IMG/VR virus record: IMGVR_UViG_3300005056_000001 | Coordinates: 124,001 to 188,000 of that record | Reading direction: 5' to 3' (one strand) | DNA: 64,000 bases | Shown here: one piece after another, positions 7,356 to 54,735 of the stretch | Layout: every line of letters starts with the position of its first letter | Numbering within the stretch: position 1 is the stretch's first letter | Notes under the pieces: model-generated | The model's input: only the letters and a program-made list of their open reading frames with translations | Databases searched by the model: none | What the model was told of the DNA's origin: nothing | Made by a program: the position numbers and the translations under genes

Positions 7356-7364
7356 GGTTATGTT

Positions 7365-7400
7365 AAAAATCGGTATCTATACTTGTGGGTACCGATTTTT
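7365..7400 (+). terminator. intrinsic terminator hairpin
   Basis: AAAAATCGGTA...TACCGATTTTT. Confidence 0.6.
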
Positions 7401-7447
7401 GATTACATTTGTAAGGTAATCATTACTAACAAACAAAAATAAGCATC

Positions 7448-7729
7448 ATGAACAATTCTAATTTAGACATATTCAACAAAAGAATACAAAACGACACGAA
7501 CTCAACAATGGATTTTAGAACGTTGATTTGTCAACTATACGATAGTGCCATAAAGCACTACCATATTAAGCTTGATACTACCTTAGCCGATAATACAGCT
7601 AGATACTGTAGGTTGGTTGGTATGAAAACAGCCGTATTAGCGTTAGGTGTAACAAAGGCTACTTATGACCAAATTGATAATATGGCAAAGACTCAAGCAT
7701 GTGTAGACATCCAAAATTGTGATTCCTAA
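7448..7729 (+). CDS. hypothetical protein
   Basis: preceded by a TACATTTG box (7404-7411). Confidence 0.6.
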   Translation: MNNSNLDIFNKRIQNDTNSTMDFRTLICQLYDSAIKHYHIKLDTTLADNTARYCRLVGMKTAVLALGVTKATYDQIDNMAKTQACVDIQNCDS

Positions 7730-7834
7730 TTGTCTGTATAACAATCAAAAATAAAAAAGTAAACCCTAAAAAATACACCACATTCCAAAAACTTTTTGTA
7801 TATTTGTATATTCTTAATTCTAAAAGTATAAAAA

Positions 7835-9106
7835 ATGGAGATTCGTCTTAAAAATATTGCATGTATCAAGGACAGCACCATAAAGATTGGCGGACTGACG
7901 GTCTTAACAGGGGAAAACAACACAGGCAAAAGTATACTAGGCAAGGTTTTATATGGTATACAAGCAGGTGTTTTTCAACAAAAACATGCCTATATATCCC
8001 ACAAGGAAACTGTGATGACAATTCTTTGTAAGGAATTGGTTGTCTTTATTAGAGATTGTAGTTCCTATGACAGGAGACGTAGTGTGCGAAAAATATTCTC
8101 TCCAAAACATTATTTTGATGAGCTGATGTCAATGATTGATGAGCAAGACGCAAAAGTTTTTGAGGGATGGAAAGATAACATCTATGATAATGCAGCCAAA
8201 TTCTTGGAAAGGAAAAATGACCTTGATATTGTTAGGGTAAAATTGGACAGCATGATCCACGCCCTAAAAATTGCCCCAAACAGAAGGGATGAACTAGTCG
8301 GATGTGTGGGTCGGAATTTATCGAATAACCTGCAAGGGAACATTAAGCACGACCGCAAAAAAGAGGCCCGTATTGTTGTAAGTGATGAACAAGGCGAAAT
8401 AATAAATATTTCGGCTTCTGAAAATAGCCATATTGTTGATTCGGTGTCGTTGCGTGAGGATTATGTGTTTAATGCGGTTAGTGTGGTTGAGTCGCCTGTT
8501 TACCTACAATTAAGCCTCTCGGATACGCTCATACCCTACCAAGAACAGCTAATGACTATGTTGGTGGATGGAAAATATTATAAATGTCCCGAGGAAAGTG
8601 TTTGTGGCGACCATGATATATGGCTAGACAAACAAATAAAAAATATAACCTCTATTATAGGCGGTACTATTTCTTCTTGCCCAAAAGGGTTTGTGTTTAT
8701 AAAAAACATGAATGTTGATGGTAAGCGTGGATTTAAGGACATCCCGTCAACTGCCTGTTCTCTTGGTGTCCTGACATTTGGCATGATACAATTGTTATTA
8801 AAGGGACATGGTATTGTAAAAAATGGAGTCGTGTTTATTGACACTCCTGAAGCCCATTTACACCCCAAGCAACAAGTAGAATATGCCAAGGTAATAGCCG
8901 AATTAATTAAATATGGGGTTAATGTGATATTAACCACCAATAGTCCCTACATGCTCAAGGCATTGGTTGAGTACACAAAAGAATGCCCGTCCAATTATTA
9001 TTTTGCGACTCGTGGAGAGGGCGGTTGCAATATGGAAAATATCACATATAATCTAAACAAGGCATTTGTTTCGTTTGCGGAACCATTGCAGGATCTTGTT
9101 TGGTAA
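7835..9106 (+). CDS. AAA_15/AAA_21-type ABC ATPase with degenerate catalytic motifs
   Basis: Walker A LTGENNTGKS; Walker B FIDTPEAHLHP; H-loop TTNSP; TATATTTG box at 7799-7806. Confidence 0.85.
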   Translation: MEIRLKNIACIKDSTIKIGGLTVLTGENNTGKSILGKVLYGIQAGVFQQKHAYISHKETVMTILCKELVVFIRDCSSYDRRRSVRKIFSPKHYFDELMSMIDEQDAKVFEGWKDNIYDNAAKFLERKNDLDIVRVKLDSMIHALKIAPNRRDELVGCVGRNLSNNLQGNIKHDRKKEARIVVSDEQGEIINISASENSHIVDSVSLREDYVFNAVSVVESPVYLQLSLSDTLIPYQEQLMTMLVDGKYYKCPEESVCGDHDIWLDKQIKNITSIIGGTISSCPKGFVFIKNMNVDGKRGFKDIPSTACSLGVLTFGMIQLLLKGHGIVKNGVVFIDTPEAHLHPKQQVEYAKVIAELIKYGVNVILTTNSPYMLKALVEYTKECPSNYYFATRGEGGCNMENITYNLNKAFVSFAEPLQDLVW

Positions 9107-9142
9107 AAAATATTGTATAACGTTTTTTCAAAAAACAAAAAA

Positions 9143-9481
9143 ATGAAAGTAAGAATACTATTCACGGTAAAAACCTATTCAACGTCAGAACAGGTAGTAA
9201 AAGATATCGACGTAAGCAATGCACAATTTAAATTATTGAGCAATACGGGCCGAAACACAGACAAGAAAGTAAAACGGTACTGTGAAACCACCTTCCCAAT
9301 GGCAGACGAGGTATGGATAACATCCATTAAGCGCATAGGACAGTCAGGAGGCTCCAAGAACAACCAAGAAGATAGCACAAGTAATTGGAGTATGTGGGGT
9401 GTAGTAAAGGGGGTGTTAAAGCTGCCATTTTATGTATTAAGAACACTTTGGAGACTGTTCCTTTGGATCTTGCCTGCATAA
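9143..9481 (+). CDS. hypothetical protein, hydrophobic C-terminus
   Basis: ORF with A-rich leader. Confidence 0.6.
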   Translation: MKVRILFTVKTYSTSEQVVKDIDVSNAQFKLLSNTGRNTDKKVKRYCETTFPMADEVWITSIKRIGQSGGSKNNQEDSTSNWSMWGVVKGVLKLPFYVLRTLWRLFLWILPA

Positions 9482-9498
9482 AAAAGAAAATTATATTA

Positions 9499-9553
9499 TA
9501 CAGGGTCATCATACAGGGTCATTGTCCAACATGAACAATGACCCTGTATGATG
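9499..9553. terminator. hairpin between convergent genes, with a TACAGGGTCAT direct repeat
   Basis: CATCATACAGGGTCATTG...CAATGACCCTGTATGATG. Confidence 0.55.
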
Positions 9554-9568
9554 TATTCTTTTCGTAAA

Positions 9569-11516: not shown

Positions 11517-11678
11517 TAATTTTCAAATATTTTCTTGGTACTGTAACGAAAATTGTGTAGTATTGTGTTGTTACTAGCACACAATTTAAATTTGTGGCTA
11601 ATTATTTAGTCAAATAAAGCCCATTTTTGTAACAAATTGTTACTATTTTTGTTACGGACTGAGCCACAAAGTATTACT

Positions 11679-12386
11679 ATGGAAAATAAAGAAAACATAT
11701 TCGCCCTGTTAAGAACTTGTGATGTTGCCAATATTAACCTAGCAATGGTATTGGACAAAGGGAATGGCGGAAATGTCTTTCGATACCTTGAGGATGATTT
11801 TAAGGAAATGTTAGACACAATCAAAAGAGAGAAGTCATTGGATACTGAATCTGTGTGGAGGTTTCTATTTAAATCGGTCGGATTGGTAGAGGATTATGGC
11901 AGTATAACATACATACCAAAAAATATTGGGCTGTTACAGAACCTTGAAATTGTTGCCATTAAACAGTGTAACATCGAAACTATTCCTGAATCGTTTTTTG
12001 AACTCAAAAATCTTACAGAAATAACTATTAGTTATTGCAATCTGAGAAGTATATCTGAAGGGTTTTCGTGCCTCACAAAATTAGATTATCTTAATTTAAG
12101 TGATAACAACATCGAACGCATACATCCGAAATTTAACGGCCTTAAAAAATTGGAATTTCTTAATTTGTCTAACAATAACATTAATCATATTCCTGATTGT
12201 ATCTATGAAATGTCTACGTTATGTACATTATTTTTGGGTAATAATAACATTACGACAATATCTAATAAAATAGAAAATTTGTCTTCGTTAATGTGCATAT
12301 CCTTGAGAGAAAACAACATAACAACACTTCCTACATCAACAAATGCTTTGGATGTGCTTAAACAATTTTTCACCATAACAGACTAA
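11679..12386 (+). CDS. leucine-rich repeat protein
   Basis: ~23-aa LxxLxLxxNxI repeats; N-cap LL....NINLA. Confidence 0.9.
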   Translation: MENKENIFALLRTCDVANINLAMVLDKGNGGNVFRYLEDDFKEMLDTIKREKSLDTESVWRFLFKSVGLVEDYGSITYIPKNIGLLQNLEIVAIKQCNIETIPESFFELKNLTEITISYCNLRSISEGFSCLTKLDYLNLSDNNIERIHPKFNGLKKLEFLNLSNNNINHIPDCIYEMSTLCTLFLGNNNITTISNKIENLSSLMCISLRENNITTLPTSTNALDVLKQFFTITD

Positions 12387-12801: not shown

Positions 12802-13317
12802 CTACAGACCTTCTTTATGTTTTTCCTTGGCCAATTGCTCGACCTCGGAGTCCTCATATCTTTTGTGTGACACAATGGTAATCTGTTCGACATCAAAAAC
12901 GGCATATTCATAGCCGATCTCGGGCTCTTCTTGATTAAGGGCAATAACCGCATCATAGTCACCCTTTCTTGCACGGGCTAGTACTTCCTTTGACATGTCG
13001 TCTGTCGTCCTGATAAACATAGGATTTTCGATGTCTAGGCGGCATGTGATTACACATGGCGTGAATGGTTCATAGTCCGTTGGTAGTCCGTCGGCAACTA
13101 ATTTATACATAAAGGCATTTACCTTGTCTATGAGTCTTGAGTATACCTGTGCGGTGTTTTTTGACGAAGAGAAATGTAGTGCAACCTCATCGGCTTTCTT
13201 GTCTGTTCGTTCTCCCTTAAATTCTGTGGAAAATTGGTCAAACACCTTTGGTGTTCCGTGATATACCTCCACGTTTTTGTACGGGACTTTTGGGATTGTT
13301 TCTACGATTCTTCTCAT
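12802..13317 (-). CDS. ART-PolyVal-like ADP-ribosyltransferase
   Basis: VYHGT...FDQF...HFSS....A..YS; LDIENP; YDAVI...E..YEYAVFD.EQI. Confidence 0.75.
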   Translation of the reverse strand: MRRIVETIPKVPYKNVEVYHGTPKVFDQFSTEFKGERTDKKADEVALHFSSSKNTAQVYSRLIDKVNAFMYKLVADGLPTDYEPFTPCVITCRLDIENPMFIRTTDDMSKEVLARARKGDYDAVIALNQEEPEIGYEYAVFDVEQITIVSHKRYEDSEVEQLAKEKHKEGL

Positions 13318-19217: not shown

Positions 19218-19916
19218 TTAAAAATCCTTTATTCGCTTTATGTATTTGTCACACACCGAGGTTTTTGATAAAGACTCCATAATGTCTTTGGTATTCTTGA
19301 ATGTATTTCCGTGTATTACTATAGTCCTTAGTCCCGAAACACGACCAATTGATTTCGGTAAAACATACAGTTCATTGTTTTGGAGCAAAAGTTCCTTTAG
19401 ATTGGTCAGGTTCCCGACCTCCTTTGGAAGTTCCCTGATACGGTTGTTGTCAACAAACAGATCCTCCAAGTTTTTAAGGTTGCAGATCTCGTTTGGTATT
19501 TCCTTCAGTAGGTTGTTTGAAAGAACCAATCTTTCTAGCGACTTTAAATTACCAATTTCCTTGGGCAGACTAGTGAGTCCGTTGTTTGCCAAATTAAGCC
19601 ATGTTAGATTGGGTAATCCACATAGATCAATTGGTATCTGTCCAAGGTGGTTTATTCTCAAATTAACATGCCTTAAATTTTTCAAATAACCTAGGCCACC
19701 CTTCAGGGTATCCAAAGAACAGCAAGACAAGTCCAAAACCGTTTCTTGTATCAACAGCTCAAAATCAATATTTATTAAGTTCATGAGCCATTCCAACTCA
19801 CCTCTGAGTGTATCAATAACCTTGGTACCCTTTGATTTGTCCAACTCTTCTGCCGACACAAAATCTCCAAGCAACAACATGTCGTATACTATTTTTTGGT
19901 CTTCTGTGAAATTCAT
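19218..19916 (-). CDS. leucine-rich repeat protein
   Basis: LPKEIGNLKSLERLVLSNNLL-type repeats. Confidence 0.92.
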   Translation of the reverse strand: MNFTEDQKIVYDMLLLGDFVSAEELDKSKGTKVIDTLRGELEWLMNLINIDFELLIQETVLDLSCCSLDTLKGGLGYLKNLRHVNLRINHLGQIPIDLCGLPNLTWLNLANNGLTSLPKEIGNLKSLERLVLSNNLLKEIPNEICNLKNLEDLFVDNNRIRELPKEVGNLTNLKELLLQNNELYVLPKSIGRVSGLRTIVIHGNTFKNTKDIMESLSKTSVCDKYIKRIKDF

Positions 19917-40743: not shown

Positions 40744-41979
40744 ATGATCAAAAAAATAAAAACGGTAGAGTTGTTTGCAGGGGTTGGGGGTTTTAGATTG
40801 GGCTTGGAGAAGTACAATAAGTACGAAATCGTTTGGAGCAACCAATGGGAACCATCCACGAAAAAACAACATGCATCATTGGTGTATGAGGCAAGATTTG
40901 GAACCAAGAACCATTCAAATGAGGACATTGGTTGTGTCCAAACAGAAGAGATACCCGACCATGACCTCCTTGTTGGGGGTTTCCCTTGTCAGGACTATTC
41001 GGTTGCCACAACCCTAAACAATGCCAAGGGTTTGGTGGGGAAAAAGGGGGTTTTGTGGTGGTCTATCCATAGAATACTAAAGGAAAAGGCCCACAAACCA
41101 AAATACTTGTTGTTTGAGAATGTAGACCGACTCTTGAAGTCTCCGTCTAGCCAAAGAGGACGAGACTTTGGGGTTATGCTAAAGAGCCTGTCTGAACTAG
41201 GCTATGCCATTGAATGGCGTGTGGTGAATGCTGCCGAATATGGCATGCCACAAAGAAGACGTCGGGTGTTTTTTATAGGCTATCACAAATCAACAAGCAT
41301 TTATAAAAAACTCGAAAGTGCCAATAAGTCGGAATGGATTACAAAGGACGGCACAATCACAGGCGCATTTCCTGTCAATAGCCAAGAAGAGCCTTGTAAC
41401 AATTTTAAGTTGGATGGTAGCCTTGTCGAGATTACCGAGGACTTCAACAAAGGCGGAAAGATGTCTCCGTTTTTAAACTCGGGTGTGATGATAGACGGAA
41501 ACGTTTACACAACAAAGACTATACCTTTATATGATGGTCGGAAGACAGTCCTTAAAGACATCCTACAAAGCGAGGGTATCGAAGACGAATTCTATATCGA
41601 CGGTAATGACCACGACAGATGGAAATACCTGAAGGGCTCCAAAAAAGAACAACGAACAACCAAGGATGGTTTTACCTATAACTATACCGAAGGATCCATG
41701 ATTTTCCCTGATGCCTTAGACAATGCGTCTAGGACAATTATCACAGGAGAAGGAGGAAAGTCACCCTCACGATTTAAGCACGTCATAGAATCAAAAGAGG
41801 GCCTAAGACGATTGATACCTGTTGAACTAGAGCGATTGAATATGTTTCCTGACGACCACACCAAATTGGATGGTATTTCCAACACAAAACGTGCATTTTT
41901 TATGGGGAATGCCTTGGTTGTGGGAGTGATCGAGAAGTTGGGTGAGGTATTGTTTGAGCGTGTTGGTGGAGATTTGTAA
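40744..41979 (+). CDS. dcm: C5 cytosine DNA methyltransferase, M.Sau3AI-like (probable GATC specificity)
   Basis: ELFAGVGG, VWSNQWEPS, GGFPCQDYSVA, ENVDRLLKSP, QRRRR, MGNALVV. Confidence 0.92.
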   Translation: MIKKIKTVELFAGVGGFRLGLEKYNKYEIVWSNQWEPSTKKQHASLVYEARFGTKNHSNEDIGCVQTEEIPDHDLLVGGFPCQDYSVATTLNNAKGLVGKKGVLWWSIHRILKEKAHKPKYLLFENVDRLLKSPSSQRGRDFGVMLKSLSELGYAIEWRVVNAAEYGMPQRRRRVFFIGYHKSTSIYKKLESANKSEWITKDGTITGAFPVNSQEEPCNNFKLDGSLVEITEDFNKGGKMSPFLNSGVMIDGNVYTTKTIPLYDGRKTVLKDILQSEGIEDEFYIDGNDHDRWKYLKGSKKEQRTTKDGFTYNYTEGSMIFPDALDNASRTIITGEGGKSPSRFKHVIESKEGLRRLIPVELERLNMFPDDHTKLDGISNTKRAFFMGNALVVGVIEKLGEVLFERVGGDL

Positions 41980-48861: not shown

Positions 48862-49211
48862 TTAAATCTTTTTGTACGAACCTCATTTCTAAGGTTCTGT
48901 AGGTCAATCTGTAGGTCAGGCTCAAACACAAAGCCTGTTTCTGTTCTGACAGCCCAACGGATTATTGGGAATGTGCCAAACAAACCGTGCCATATGGCCA
49001 AGAATGGTGCAACTGCCGTGCTCATGCTAGGAAGTATGATTGTGGCTGTCTGTCCTGCCTTTAAGTCCTCGAACTCGTCGAGTTCTAGCAGTATTGTTTC
49101 TAGTTGGTTTATTAATGTTTCGGGGGAGGTTTGATCCAACATACCTACCTTTGGTTGGTGGGTTGTTCCGTTGACTATGGCAGGATGCCCCGAGAAGTTT
49201 AGTATTTGCAT
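48858..49211 (-). CDS. csx15: Csx15-family protein (CRISPR type III ancillary homolog), stand-alone
   Basis: ILNFSGHP...IILP....A...LA..HG..G.FP.IR...DLQ.LR...R.KR. Confidence 0.8.
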   Translation of the reverse strand: MQILNFSGHPAIVNGTTHQPKVGMLDQTSPETLINQLETILLELDEFEDLKAGQTATIILPSMSTAVAPFLAIWHGLFGTFPIIRWAVRTETGFVFEPDLQIDLQNLRNEVRTKRFK

Positions 49212-53529: not shown

Positions 53530-54735
53530 TTGAAGAAAAACAAGACATATAAATACAGGTTATCCCCTAATGTTACACAAAGCATTATGCTGAATAAAAC
53601 ATTCGGTTGTGTGCGTGCATATTGGAATAATCTTGTTGCGACATTTAATTCGTATGATAAAGTAACTAATCCCAAGCCTTTATTTAATACAGGAAAGGAG
53701 TTTAGTGACGTTTTTGTTTACGCAAAGGAAGTATCTGCTGCATCACTACAGCAAAAGTTTCGTGATTTTTCTCAATTCAAAAATCAGTTCTTCAATAAAA
53801 AAAGGAAAAAGAAAATAGGAAGGCCAAGCTTTAAGAAAAAAGGTTTTGGAGATTCCTTTAGATTGCCCAACCAAAAAATCCGTATCAAGGATAACAAAAT
53901 TAGACTTGAAAAGATTGGTTGGGTTAAATTTGACAACCACAGACAATTGCCTGTGGATTCACGTGTCCTGTCAATAACAGTAAAGAAAGACAGTGTAGGA
54001 GATTATTTTGCTTCTGTCTGTTTTGAGTATGTATGGAAGCCCAAGATAAATAGAATGAACATTATAGAGTCAAAAAAGGAAGTATCTACTATAAAACCAA
54101 ATGTGGGCATCGACCTAGGACTTACCTATTTAGCCATCCTTTCGGATGGTACAGTATTCTTGAATCCTAAATATCTTAGAGAAAGCCAATCTAAGCTTAA
54201 AAAGTCACAAAGAATCCTTTCCCGAAAAATAAAAGGTAGTGTACGATGGAACAGGCAACGGATAAAGGTTGCCAAATTACACCGTAAGATTGTTCGTCAA
54301 CGTGATTGGTCACATCATAACATAACCACGTGGATAGCCGACAATTACAACAACGTAGGGATTGAAACGTTAAGTATACAAAACATGATGAAGAACAGGA
54401 AACTTTCTAAATCTTTTGCTGATACCTCACTAAGTAAATTTGTCAATATGCTTATTTATAAGGTAGATGATAGAGGCAACGAGGTAGTCAGACTAGGAAC
54501 GTTTGTTCCTTCGACAAAAGAATGTTCTTCCTGTTCACACCAACAGACCGTTGCGCTATCTGAAAGAACCTTTAAATGCGAATGCTGTGGATTTGCCATG
54601 GATAGGGACTTGAATGCAGCAATAAATATTAAGAAAAAGACCGTAGGAGTTAATGCGGTCATCGCCAATGGCGACAAACGAACACTGAGCAACAAGAAGT
54701 CTCTACACCCGAATGTGGGTGTAAAGCAGTTGTGA
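53530..54735 (+). CDS. tnpB: TnpB RNA-guided endonuclease (IS200/IS605, IS1341-type, no tnpA)
   Basis: YKYRLSPN..FGCVR..WN; GIDLG; IETL; CSSC/CECC; DRDLNAAINI. Confidence 0.95.
   Translation: MKKNKTYKYRLSPNVTQSIMLNKTFGCVRAYWNNLVATFNSYDKVTNPKPLFNTGKEFSDVFVYAKEVSAASLQQKFRDFSQFKNQFFNKKRKKKIGRPSFKKKGFGDSFRLPNQKIRIKDNKIRLEKIGWVKFDNHRQLPVDSRVLSITVKKDSVGDYFASVCFEYVWKPKINRMNIIESKKEVSTIKPNVGIDLGLTYLAILSDGTVFLNPKYLRESQSKLKKSQRILSRKIKGSVRWNRQRIKVAKLHRKIVRQRDWSHHNITTWIADNYNNVGIETLSIQNMMKNRKLSKSFADTSLSKFVNMLIYKVDDRGNEVVRLGTFVPSTKECSSCSHQQTVALSERTFKCECCGFAMDRDLNAAINIKKKTVGVNAVIANGDKRTLSNKKSLHPNVGVKQL

What the first reader, a model, noticed from the sequence alone, without database searches (positions are those of the whole stretch)
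7835..9106. Defence-type ABC ATPase with both catalytic residues substituted: possible decoy
Seen: Walker A is intact, but Walker B reads IDTPE (family IDEPE), the H-loop reads TTNSP (family TTHSP), there is no partner nuclease, and the gene has its own promoter box. Established: AAA_15/21 ATPases are the sensor or scaffold subunits of PARIS, Septu, Gabija and retron-associated systems, and the Glu and His are needed for hydrolysis. Inference: an ATP-binding, non-hydrolysing subunit could poison or sequester a host defence complex.
Basis: partly seen in the sequence, partly recalled or inferred. Interest (0 to 1): 0.62.

Follow-up and report, generated by a model that had tools for sequence, protein, structure and literature searches.

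The report
Solo dead defence ATPase in jumbo phage
A 368-kb phage carries a lone copy of an ATPase that bacteria normally pair with a nuclease to fight phages; this copy has lost the residues needed to burn ATP but is still kept intact, so it may jam that kind of bacterial defence, which no experiment has yet tested.

Summary
ORF 7835..9106 (+) encodes a 423-aa ABC-type ATPase (Pfam AAA_15/AAA_21) with an intact Walker A. The Walker B Glu is Thr337 and the H-loop His is Asn369. Among 188 relatives and 115 further loci, no other member has lost both. The predicted signature motif is also degenerate (N307A, S/T310L, K313L), and W346 is Gln.

The family is a two-gene cassette: ATPase plus a roughly 200-aa PD-(D/E)xK (NERD-like) nuclease. 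The homologous nuclease lies next to the ATPase in 105 of 115 loci. The closest named systems are HEC-02 and PD-T4-4. The 368-kb phage has no such nuclease.

The phage protein sits inside the family tree on a branch 3.4 times the median length, yet it keeps an open frame, 84 of 100 class-conserved columns and a confident ABC fold. It is therefore a maintained pseudo-ATPase, not a relic.

The decoy or poison-subunit reading is plausible (about 0.3). It fits a host-type promoter box and the precedent of viral orphan cas genes. It is untested, and the target family is rare in the likely host phylum. Rivals are a new module with the two flanking ORFans, or another non-catalytic role.

The parts
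7362..7403 (+). Strong hairpin followed by a U-run, after the upstream 424-aa gene. Likely terminator that sets the 5' boundary of the unit.
   Evidence: dG -22.1 kcal/mol, z -6.6, 0 of 200 shuffles fold as well. Sequence read.
7404..7411 (+). TAnnTTTG box (TACATTTG), 44 nt upstream of the 93-aa ORF. Matches the Bacteroidota sigma-A -7 element.
   Evidence: the motif peaks 30-60 nt upstream of called starts genome-wide (34 sites against about 3 per 10-nt bin elsewhere). That this is the Bacteroidota -7 consensus is my own knowledge.
7448..7729 (+). ORFan of 93 aa, first ORF of the putative three-ORF unit.
   Evidence: No Pfam, PHROG, PADLOC or NCBIfam hit. No usable Atlas lead.
7799..7806 (+). 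TAnnTTTG box (TATATTTG), 36 nt upstream of the ATPase start codon.
   Evidence: No sigma-70 consensus site and no GTACATA late-type motif lie here.
7835..9106 (+). Gene for the 423-aa ABC-type (AAA_15/AAA_21) pseudo-ATPase P0001. It is a solo derivative of the ATPase subunit of an ATPase + NERD-like nuclease defence cassette.
7910..7933 (+). Walker A / P-loop, residues 26-33 (GENNTGKS), intact.
   Evidence: G26, N28, G31, K32 and S33 match the family's invariant or near-invariant residues.
8753..8773 (+). Predicted signature (C-loop) motif, residues 307-313, at the N-terminal cap of helix 310-323. It is degenerate: N307A, S/T310L and K313L; only G311 is kept.
   Evidence: Family values are N 158/188, S or T 163/188 and K or R 181/188. 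Calling this the signature motif rests on its place in the AF2 model and is inferred.
8828..8851 (+). Walker B, residues 332-339 (VVFIDTPE). D336 is kept. The catalytic Glu is replaced by Thr337 (codon ACT, 8843-8845). The invariant E339 is kept.
8933..8947 (+). H-loop, residues 367-371 (TTNSP). His is replaced by Asn369 (codon AAT, 8939-8941).
8990..9103 (+). C-terminal beta-hairpin and helix, residues 386-423, ending in the family's AEPLQDLVW-type tail. This is the only region that is no more diverged than in ordinary members, so it is a candidate retained interaction surface (inferred).
   Evidence: rank 29 of 107, against 1-2 of 107 for the other regions..
9143..9481 (+). ORFan of 112 aa with a hydrophobic/amphipathic C-terminal tail, 36 nt after the ATPase stop. 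It is not related to the family's nuclease partner.
   Evidence: (no relative among 5.8 billion clusters).
9502..9559 (.). Long perfect hairpin between the unit and the convergent 520-aa gene. Likely a bidirectional terminator that sets the 3' boundary of the unit.
   Evidence: dG -35.3 kcal/mol, z -7.1, 0 of 200 shuffles fold as well. Sequence read.

Best explanation
P0001 is a pseudo-ATPase. It descends from the ATPase subunit of a two-gene bacterial defence cassette made of an ABC ATPase and a small PD-(D/E)xK/NERD-like nuclease. The nearest named systems are HEC-02 and PD-T4-4. A jumbo phage, probably infecting Bacteroidota, captured the ATPase without its nuclease.

Shown here:
- The protein keeps the P-loop, the Walker B Asp, the PE-H-LHP block, the overall fold and the family's C-terminal element.
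- It has lost the catalytic Glu, the H-loop His and the signature-motif residues.
- Selection keeps the frame open.

Inferred:
- It still binds nucleotide but cannot hydrolyse it or close a productive ATP sandwich, so it must work by binding.
- Most likely mechanism: it is made early from a host-type promoter and acts as a dominant-negative mimic of the host's ATPase subunit. One route is to enter the host ATPase oligomer. Both composite sites of a mixed dimer would then be crippled: its own site lacks Glu and His, and the partner's site faces a dead signature motif. The other route is to hold the nuclease in an inactive complex. Either way the defence never fires.

I give about 0.85 to the pseudo-ATPase-from-a-defence-cassette part. 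The confidence figure for this entry applies to the anti-defence mechanism.
For: - Family membership and fold.
- Cassette structure: 5 of 5 homolog contexts have an adjacent downstream gene of 185-222 aa. Of 115 viral and genomic loci, 107 have a downstream ORF and 105 of those form one family with a conserved D...ExK motif. Two partners hit HEC-02B weakly.
- Published support for the cassette: HEC-02 is an ABC ATPase plus a NERD nuclease, and both genes are needed for defence (10.1101/2024.01.29.577857).
- No partner in the phage.
- Derived and accelerated: P0001 is nested in a 36-row clade (SH-aLRT 91) with an end branch of 1.48 against a median of 0.43.
- Losses unique to P0001.
- Still under selection: a 423-codon open frame in 38% GC DNA, 84 of 100 class-conserved columns kept, and 21 of 25 columns conserved at 90% or more kept. 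The locus is identical in three metagenomes.
- The C-terminal element is conserved at the normal family level.
- Timing and context: a TAnnTTTG box lies upstream and the GTACATA motif is absent. GTACATA precedes the tail sheath, tail protein, terminase and baseplate spike genes. The neighbours are ORFans plus an ART-PolyVal ADP-ribosyltransferase.
- Literature: NTPase active-site motifs are needed for defence in vivo. In the systems tested in that study, mutating them left DNA cleavage by the purified complexes intact (10.1101/2025.07.10.664194). PtuA E396Q and signature-motif Q361L mutants are ATPase-deficient or non-toxic yet still assemble (PMC12819146). Viral orphan cas genes inhibit CRISPR by forming defective complexes (10.1101/2023.06.24.545427). 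A subunit-poisoning mechanism has been proposed for AcrIB4 (10.1101/2025.06.06.658234).
Against: - No binding, inhibition or expression data exist.
- Co-folding with the nuclease of the nearest relative gave no verdict, which counts neither way.
- P0001 is at most about 31% identical to any of roughly 15 billion proteins. A poison subunit would be expected to stay close to its target, at least at the interfaces.
- The family is rare in the presumed host phylum: 0 of 400 other sampled Bacteroidota species genomes match at E<=1e-40.
- The host is unknown.
- Loss of the signature motif and of three other conserved charged residues may also abolish co-assembly.
- The gene looks co-transcribed with two ORFans, which fits a new module as well.
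- Stand-alone Septu PtuA shows that a non-hydrolysing ATPase can be a true defence component.
- A lone H-to-N change occurs in a normal bacterial cassette, P0189.
Confidence: 0.3

Rival explanations
1. Effector-swapped phage module. The ATPase-like protein works with the co-transcribed ORFans: the 93-aa protein and the 112-aa protein with a hydrophobic tail. Together they form a new three-gene unit, for example superinfection exclusion or host takeover. P0001 would act as an ATP-binding sensor or scaffold, and the small tail-anchored protein would replace the nuclease as the output.
For: Two strong hairpins bracket exactly these three ORFs, and there is no terminator between them. The 112-aa ORF starts 36 nt after the ATPase stop. 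Stand-alone Septu PtuA works without hydrolysis as an ATP-level sensor (PMC12819146). ABC-ATPase defence systems swap effectors freely (10.1101/2024.01.29.577857).
Against: Both small ORFs are ORFans with no relative anywhere, so no conserved linkage can be shown. Every prophage-borne defensive member keeps DEPE, THS and the nuclease. The loss of the signature motif and the fast divergence point to release from the ancestral mechanism, not to a simple partner swap.
Confidence: 0.25
2. Exaptation to a phage housekeeping role unrelated to defence. The protein would be a non-catalytic nucleotide- or DNA-binding scaffold used in replication, recombination or assembly.
For: The fold resembles SMC/Rad50 heads. 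The window also holds replication and recombination genes: a helicase, a 5'-3' exonuclease and a PolB-type exonuclease. Purifying selection acts on the fold without the catalytic residues.
Against: No other phage in IMG/VR or INPHARED carries an ortholog, which is unusual for a core function. It lies among ORFans, not inside a replication operon. It descends from an accessory defence cassette.
Confidence: 0.2
3. Still an active ATPase. Another residue would take over catalysis, for example the invariant E339 two positions after Thr337. The protein would then keep the ancestral sensor activity with an unrecognised effector.
For: E339 is invariant in 188 of 188 relatives and is kept in P0001. 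ATPase-deficient PtuA mutants retain some activity (PMC12819146). A lone H-to-N change exists in a normal cassette, P0189.
Against: The Glu, the His and three signature residues are lost together, and no other member shows this combination. From general knowledge of ABC ATPases, replacing the Walker B Glu or the H-loop His abolishes or greatly reduces hydrolysis. The same pair of losses marks the degenerate, non-hydrolytic sites of CFTR NBD1 and TAP1.
Confidence: 0.1
4. Decaying remnant. The phage captured half a cassette and the gene has no function.
For: It has a long branch, has lost catalytic residues, is solo and has no orthologs in other phages.
Against: The frame is open for 423 codons in DNA where about 1 codon in 15 would be a stop by base composition (my estimate). 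After about 1.5 substitutions per site, 84% of class-conserved columns are still kept. The fold is confident, the N- and C-termini are precise, and the locus is identical in three samples.
Confidence: 0.08

Closest known systems
HEC-02 (HEC-02A ABC ATPase + HEC-02B NERD nuclease; Payne et al., bioRxiv 10.1101/2024.01.29.577857)
   Same: The ATPase is an ABC type with Insert 1 and Insert 2 elaborations. PADLOC HEC-02A models are among the best hits for P0001 (1e-18) and the best for canonical family members (1e-25 to 1e-30). The family's partner carries a PD-(D/E)xK-type D...ExK motif, and two partners hit HEC-02B weakly. The gene order is ATPase then nuclease, with overlapping genes.
   Different: The family's ATPase is about 100 aa longer than the HEC-02A models (about 430 against 338 aa), and matches cover mainly the C-terminal lobe. 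P0001 has no HEC-02B-like partner and has lost the catalytic Glu, the His and the signature motif.
PD-T4-4 (PD-(D/E)XK nuclease + P-loop NTPase; Vassallo et al. 2022; bioRxiv 10.1101/2025.07.10.664194)
   Same: This is the best PADLOC hit for P0001 (PD-T4-4_A, 4e-23). It has the same nuclease-NTPase logic and forms higher-order complexes.
   Different: The match is partial. The family's partners do not hit any PD-T4-4_B model. P0001 is solo and catalytically degenerate.
Septu / retron type I-A PtuA (PDB 8EEA, 8EE4, 9N69, 9VKZ)
   Same: These are the closest solved structures by sequence profile (7e-12) and by fold (Foldseek 5e-8). They share the D-E...HLHPKWQ...THSP motif layout. Stand-alone PtuA binds ATP without hydrolysing it.
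   Different: PtuA pairs with an HNH nuclease (PtuB) and keeps the Glu, which is E396 in Ec78 PtuA. Fold similarity is only TM about 0.4 and identity 12%.
Viral orphan cas genes acting as anti-CRISPRs (Katz et al., bioRxiv 10.1101/2023.06.24.545427); AcrIB4 subunit poisoning (EVADES preprint 10.1101/2025.06.06.658234)
   Same: The concept is the same: a virus carries a lone homolog of one subunit of a multi-subunit defence complex, and this homolog assembles into a defective complex or sequesters a component.
   Different: Those cases involve CRISPR-Cas subunits and some were tested experimentally. Here the subunit is an ABC ATPase and nothing has been tested.
Degenerate nucleotide-binding sites of heterodimeric ABC proteins (CFTR NBD1, TAP1); from my own knowledge
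   Same: The Walker B Glu and the H-loop His are lost together while the P-loop is kept, which gives stable ATP binding without hydrolysis.
   Different: In those proteins the same domain keeps a good signature motif to serve the partner's active site. P0001 has lost its signature motif too, so both sites of any dimer would be compromised.

Membership tests
AAA_15 / AAA_21 ABC-type ATPase superfamily (Pfam PF13175, PF13304) | Profile match above the curated gathering score | tested here: met
   AAA_15 scores 48.9 bits (cut-off 32.1). AAA_21 scores 37.8 bits (cut-off 27).
AAA_15 / AAA_21 ABC-type ATPase superfamily | ABC ATPase fold, with a Rad50/SMC/PtuA-like head and a helical insert | tested here: met
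   AF2 pLDDT is 93.6. The Foldseek top hits are PtuA, retron Eco8, and SMC and Rad50 heads, each at probability 1.00.
AAA_15 / AAA_21 ABC-type ATPase superfamily | Full catalytic motif set: Walker A, signature, Walker B D-E and H-loop His | tested here: not met
   Walker A and the Walker B Asp are present. The Glu is Thr337, the His is Asn369, and the signature motif is degenerate.
ATPase + NERD-like nuclease cassette (HEC-02/PD-T4-4-like family defined here) | The ATPase is homologous over its full length to family members | tested here: met
   Hits cover residues 1-423 at 1e-39 to 1e-25. phrog_14430 matches at 8e-40 over residues 1-388. P0001 is nested inside the family tree.
ATPase + NERD-like nuclease cassette (HEC-02/PD-T4-4-like family defined here) | An adjacent downstream PD-(D/E)xK partner gene of about 170-250 aa | tested here: not met
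   The partner is present in 105 of 115 loci. It is absent next to P0001 and absent from the whole 368-kb phage.
ATPase + NERD-like nuclease cassette (HEC-02/PD-T4-4-like family defined here) | Confers phage defence | not testable with these tools
   This is shown only for HEC-02 and PD-T4-4 in the literature. The family itself is not modelled in PADLOC 2.0.0.
PARIS (AriA/AriB) | An AriA-type ATPase with an adjacent or fused Toprim AriB | tested here: not met
   AriA models are only secondary hits at 5e-15 and cover only the C-terminal motif. No Toprim gene lies nearby.
Septu (PtuA/PtuB) | PtuA with an adjacent HNH nuclease PtuB | tested here: not met
   PtuA models hit at 9e-12 or weaker. NCBIfam PtuA scores 21 bits against a cut-off of 500. 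There is no HNH neighbour.
Gabija GajA / OLD family | An ATPase fused to a Toprim nuclease domain | tested here: not met
   The protein ends at residue 423 with no Toprim domain. GajA and Old hits (4e-9, 3e-11) cover only short motifs.
Phage anti-defence protein (subunit mimic or poison) | Binds a component of a defence system and abolishes defence | not testable with these tools
   The one co-folding job gave no verdict. No experimental data exist.
Phage anti-defence protein (subunit mimic or poison) | Early expression and an accessory, fast-evolving locus | tested here: inconclusive
   It has a host-type TAnnTTTG box and lacks the late-type GTACATA motif. The neighbours are ORFans plus an ART-PolyVal gene.

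The most novel reading that the evidence does not exclude
P0001 would be the first anti-defence protein known to have evolved by capture and catalytic inactivation of the ABC-ATPase subunit of a nuclease-NTPase defence system. As a poison subunit or effector trap it would hold HEC-02/PD-T4-4-like complexes, and possibly related ABC-ATPase complexes, in the off state. That would extend the 'viral orphan cas gene' principle beyond CRISPR to the largest class of ATPase-nuclease defences.
Probability: 0.27. Interest if true: 0.8.

Novelty: new variant of a known kind. Interest (0 to 1): 0.5.

Why it matters
ABC-ATPase plus nuclease systems (Septu, PARIS, Gabija, OLD, Lamassu, HEC-01 to HEC-04, PD-T4-4) are among the most common bacterial defences. 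It is still unclear what the ATPase does and how phages escape most of these systems.

P0001 is a naturally occurring subunit that selection has kept, that appears hydrolysis-dead and signature-dead, and that a lytic-type jumbo phage carries. This makes it a ready reagent. If it inhibits its parent family, it would show that phages can turn off such systems by subunit mimicry. It would also show which surfaces of the ATPase matter for assembly as opposed to firing.

If instead it works with the two flanking ORFans, it shows a defence sensor being re-wired to a new output inside a virus. Either way it is a clean case of pseudo-enzyme evolution from an immune gene.

There are limits. It is a single orphan lineage from an uncultured phage with an unknown host, so direct tests need heterologous systems.

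Tried and rejected
- **Close relatives of the gene or phage.** Megablast and tblastn against 50,697 phage records found nothing closer than 32% identity over 27% of the protein. Pattern scans of IMG/VR with P0001 and with both neighbouring large genes found no relatives. No syntenic comparison and no dN/dS were therefore possible. The three contigs that carry the locus are identical.
- **The 112-aa downstream ORF as a diverged nuclease partner.** Rejected: 16% identity, no D...ExK motif and no family hits.
- **A partner elsewhere in the phage.** Neither the 5-sequence profile nor the 105-sequence iterated HMM hits any frame.
- **Heterodimer with the phage's second small ABC-like ATPase** (203 aa, intact motifs), with P0001 as the 'degenerate half'. 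Judged unlikely because P0001's own signature motif is also dead. Not tested further.
- **Co-folding of P0001 with the nuclease encoded next to its nearest relative.** No verdict (score 0.15, mark 0.32). This is not evidence either way.
- **Sequencing-run search** for expression and population variants.
- **One context look-up** (P0009) failed with a server error.
- **Atlas and BFVD searches.** They gave no leads for the two ORFans or for viral look-alikes with dead motifs.
- **A sigma-70 promoter upstream of the gene.** No consensus site in 7730-7834.
- **Membership of PARIS, Septu or Gabija.** Considered and rejected (see Membership tests).
Full report
**Setting.** The window is bases 124,001-188,000 of a 368,109-bp virus record with direct terminal repeats, that is, a jumbo phage. 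GC content is about 38%. Shine-Dalgarno motifs are almost absent: 3 of 215 long ORFs have one. The nearest phages, by a helicase, are Tenacibaculum phages pT24 and PTm1 and a Chryseobacterium phage. A Bacteroidota host is therefore likely, though this is inferred.

**The observation.** ORF 7835..9106 (+) encodes 423 aa, stored as P0001.
- It matches Pfam AAA_15 and AAA_21 above their gathering scores. It also matches phrog_14430 over its full length at 8e-40.
- Among PADLOC models the best hits are PD-T4-4_A, PDC-M47A, NsnB, HEC-02A and AriA.
- I aligned it with 188 relatives, drawn from a word search and an exhaustive search of 1.84 billion representatives.
- Walker A is intact.
- Position 337 is E in 183 of 188 relatives. 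The exceptions are four distant outgroup proteins and P0081.
- Position 369 is H in 187 of 188 relatives. The exception is P0189.
- P0001 alone has lost both.
- All 115 further loci, 35 from IMG/VR and 80 from GTDB genomes, read DEPE and (S/T)HS. One of the two genome-scan patterns contained DEPE. The other pattern and both viral patterns were neutral at these two positions.
- In the AF2 model (pLDDT 93.6), T337 and N369 sit directly after the Walker B strand and the H-loop strand.
- The codons are ACT and AAT, so the Glu-to-Thr change took several steps.

- The motif at the N-terminal cap of helix 310-323, the predicted signature motif, has lost N307, S/T310 and K313.
- W346 is Q.
- Conserved charged positions 214, 238 and 242 are lost.
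- In total 16 of 100 class-conserved columns deviate. This is the highest count among 108 sequences, against a median of 4.

**What the family is.** In five of five homolog contexts, a gene of 185-222 aa with no Pfam match overlaps or abuts the ATPase stop codon.
- Across the 115 loci, 107 have such a downstream ORF, and 105 of those belong to one family by iterated HMM.
- That partner carries nearly invariant D, D, E-x-K and K residues, the PD-(D/E)xK pattern. Two partners hit HEC-02B weakly.
- HEC-02 is an ABC ATPase plus a NERD (PD-(D/E)xK) nuclease, and both genes are required for defence (10.1101/2024.01.29.577857).
- PD-T4-4 is a PD-(D/E)XK nuclease plus an NTPase that form higher-order complexes (10.1101/2025.07.10.664194).
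- Canonical family members hit these PADLOC models only partially. The family is therefore a relative of these systems, not a member of a modelled system.
- It occurs in many phyla and often as a prophage moron. One example sits inside a P2-like tail module and another just before a terminase gene.
- By sequence and fold, the nearest solved structures are Septu and retron PtuA, then OLD, AriA and Rad50/SMC heads.

**What is different in the phage.**
- No partner exists next to the gene or anywhere in the 368-kb genome.
- In a tree of 120 sequences, P0001 lies inside the family, in a 36-row clade with SH-aLRT support of 91. Its end branch is 1.48, against a median of 0.43. The substitutions are therefore derived and the lineage is accelerated.
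- It is among the most diverged members in the N-lobe, the insert and the C-lobe. Its C-terminal 38 residues, which end in the family's AEPLQDLVW-type tail, are conserved at the normal family level.
- The frame is open, 84 of 100 class-conserved columns are kept, the fold is confident, and the locus is identical in three metagenome assemblies. This argues for a protein under selection and against a relic.

**Local anatomy.**
- Two strong hairpins, at 7362-7403 and 9502-9559 (z -6.6 and -7.1), bracket three ORFs. These are a 93-aa ORFan, the ATPase and a 112-aa ORFan with a hydrophobic tail.
- The two ORFans have no relatives.
- No sigma-70 consensus site precedes the ATPase.
- A TAnnTTTG box lies 36 nt upstream of the ATPase and another lies 44 nt upstream of the 93-aa ORF. 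Across the genome this motif peaks 30-60 nt before start codons. From my own knowledge it is the Bacteroidota sigma-A -7 element.
- A second, much sharper motif, GTACATA, lies 18-60 nt before about 50 genes. These include the tail sheath, a tail protein, the large terminase and the baseplate spike. It is a late-type signal, and the target gene lacks it.
- Together these points suggest early transcription by the host polymerase, but this is inferred.
- The neighbourhood is mostly ORFans, plus an ART-PolyVal ADP-ribosyltransferase and LRR proteins.

**Mechanism.** What is shown is a solo, maintained derivative of a defence ATPase that lacks the catalytic and signature motifs.
- From established ABC-ATPase biochemistry, it should still bind nucleotide through the P-loop and the Walker B Asp. 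It should not hydrolyse it or form a productive sandwich.
- In related systems the E-to-Q mutant and a signature-motif mutant still assemble, but the E-to-Q mutant releases less active complex and the signature mutant has lost the wild-type toxicity (PMC12819146).
- NTPase motifs are needed for defence in vivo. In the systems tested in that study, mutating them left DNA cleavage by the purified complexes intact.
- A phage-made dead subunit could therefore poison the host ATPase oligomer or trap the nuclease.
- Viral orphan cas genes set the precedent, as does the proposed AcrIB4 subunit poisoning.

I rate this mechanism at about 0.3, for these reasons:
- Nothing has been tested, and the co-folding job gave no verdict.
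- Identity to any known member is at most about 31%.
- The family was not found in 400 other sampled Bacteroidota genomes.
- The operon-like layout fits a new module with the ORFans about equally well (0.25).
- The other rivals are a housekeeping exaptation (0.2), residual activity through another residue such as E339 (0.1) and a relic (0.08).

**Verdict.** The family assignment should be changed to a HEC-02/PD-T4-4-like ATPase plus NERD-nuclease cassette. I class the finding as a new variant of a known kind, with interest 0.5.

Noticed in passing
Genome-wide. In the window at about 11154(-)/11161(+), 13660(-), 16713(-), 18026(+), 19213(-), 25765(-), 50390(-) and 61552(+)/61555(-): The motif GTACATA, often as (T/G)GTACATA(C/T/A), lies 18-60 nt upstream of about 50 start codons. 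Of 93 genome occurrences, 57 are within 120 nt upstream of a start, a 9.9-fold enrichment. It precedes the tail sheath, tail protein, large terminase and baseplate spike genes, so it is probably this phage's late promoter.
   Followed up: partly
G000:C1 about 49,110-49,153 (-), outside the window: Three copies of GGTACATAC spaced 21-22 nt apart lie upstream of one gene. This looks like a tandem array of the late-type motif.
   Followed up: no
L008:1396-2007 (-), which is G000:C1 about 64,411-65,022, outside the window: The phage has a second, minimal ABC-like ATPase of 203 aa with an intact Walker A, DEPE and an H-loop His. It hits AriA, HEC-02A and PtuA models and lies next to an LRR protein. 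It too appears to lack a nuclease partner.
   Followed up: partly
window 12802..13317 (-): A 171-aa protein carries an ART-PolyVal ADP-ribosyltransferase domain (1.4e-10). This domain is typical of phage and plasmid 'polyvalent' host-takeover or counter-defence proteins. It lies 3.7 kb from the target.
   Followed up: no
window 11637..12386 (+), window 19218..19916 (-), and L008:2030-2896 (-): The phage encodes several small leucine-rich-repeat proteins (LRR_8, 1e-21 to 1e-22). This is unusual phage cargo, and one of them also has a TAnnTTTG box upstream.
   Followed up: no
window 53530..54735 (+): A TnpB / IS605 OrfB-type gene (OrfB_IS605, Cas12f1-like TNB and HTH domains) sits inside the jumbo phage genome.
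   Followed up: no
window 40744..41979 (+): A C-5 cytosine DNA methyltransferase (3e-65), probably for self-protection against restriction.
   Followed up: no
L012-L014 (ENA metagenome contigs): A canonical ATPase-plus-nuclease cassette of this family is inserted inside a P2-like prophage tail module, between the gpD-like gene and the PAAR/gpU genes. In L016 another cassette sits just upstream of the terminase genes. These are typical moron or defence hotspots.
   Followed up: partly
L146:4846-6257 (Logan contig, protein P0189) and L144/L145 (protein P0081): Rare single substitutions occur in short (about 300-aa) bacterial members. P0189 has H-loop H to N and still has an overlapping 179-aa partner. 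P0081 has Walker B E to N and sits on contigs of about 1.4 kb. Single losses may therefore be tolerated within working cassettes.
   Followed up: partly
L154, which is G000:C1:86703-90869 (-), outside the window: A 1389-aa SbcC/Rad50-like protein with a metallophosphoesterase-type PHROG match. This is a third ABC-type ATPase in the phage.
   Followed up: no
window 7835..9481 and flanks (L141-L143): The same locus is 100% identical in three assemblies from different samples: JGI 3300005056, JGI 3300029927 and ENA ERZ23495903 (a 368,684-bp contig, circularly permuted, that starts inside the ATPase gene).
   Followed up: yes
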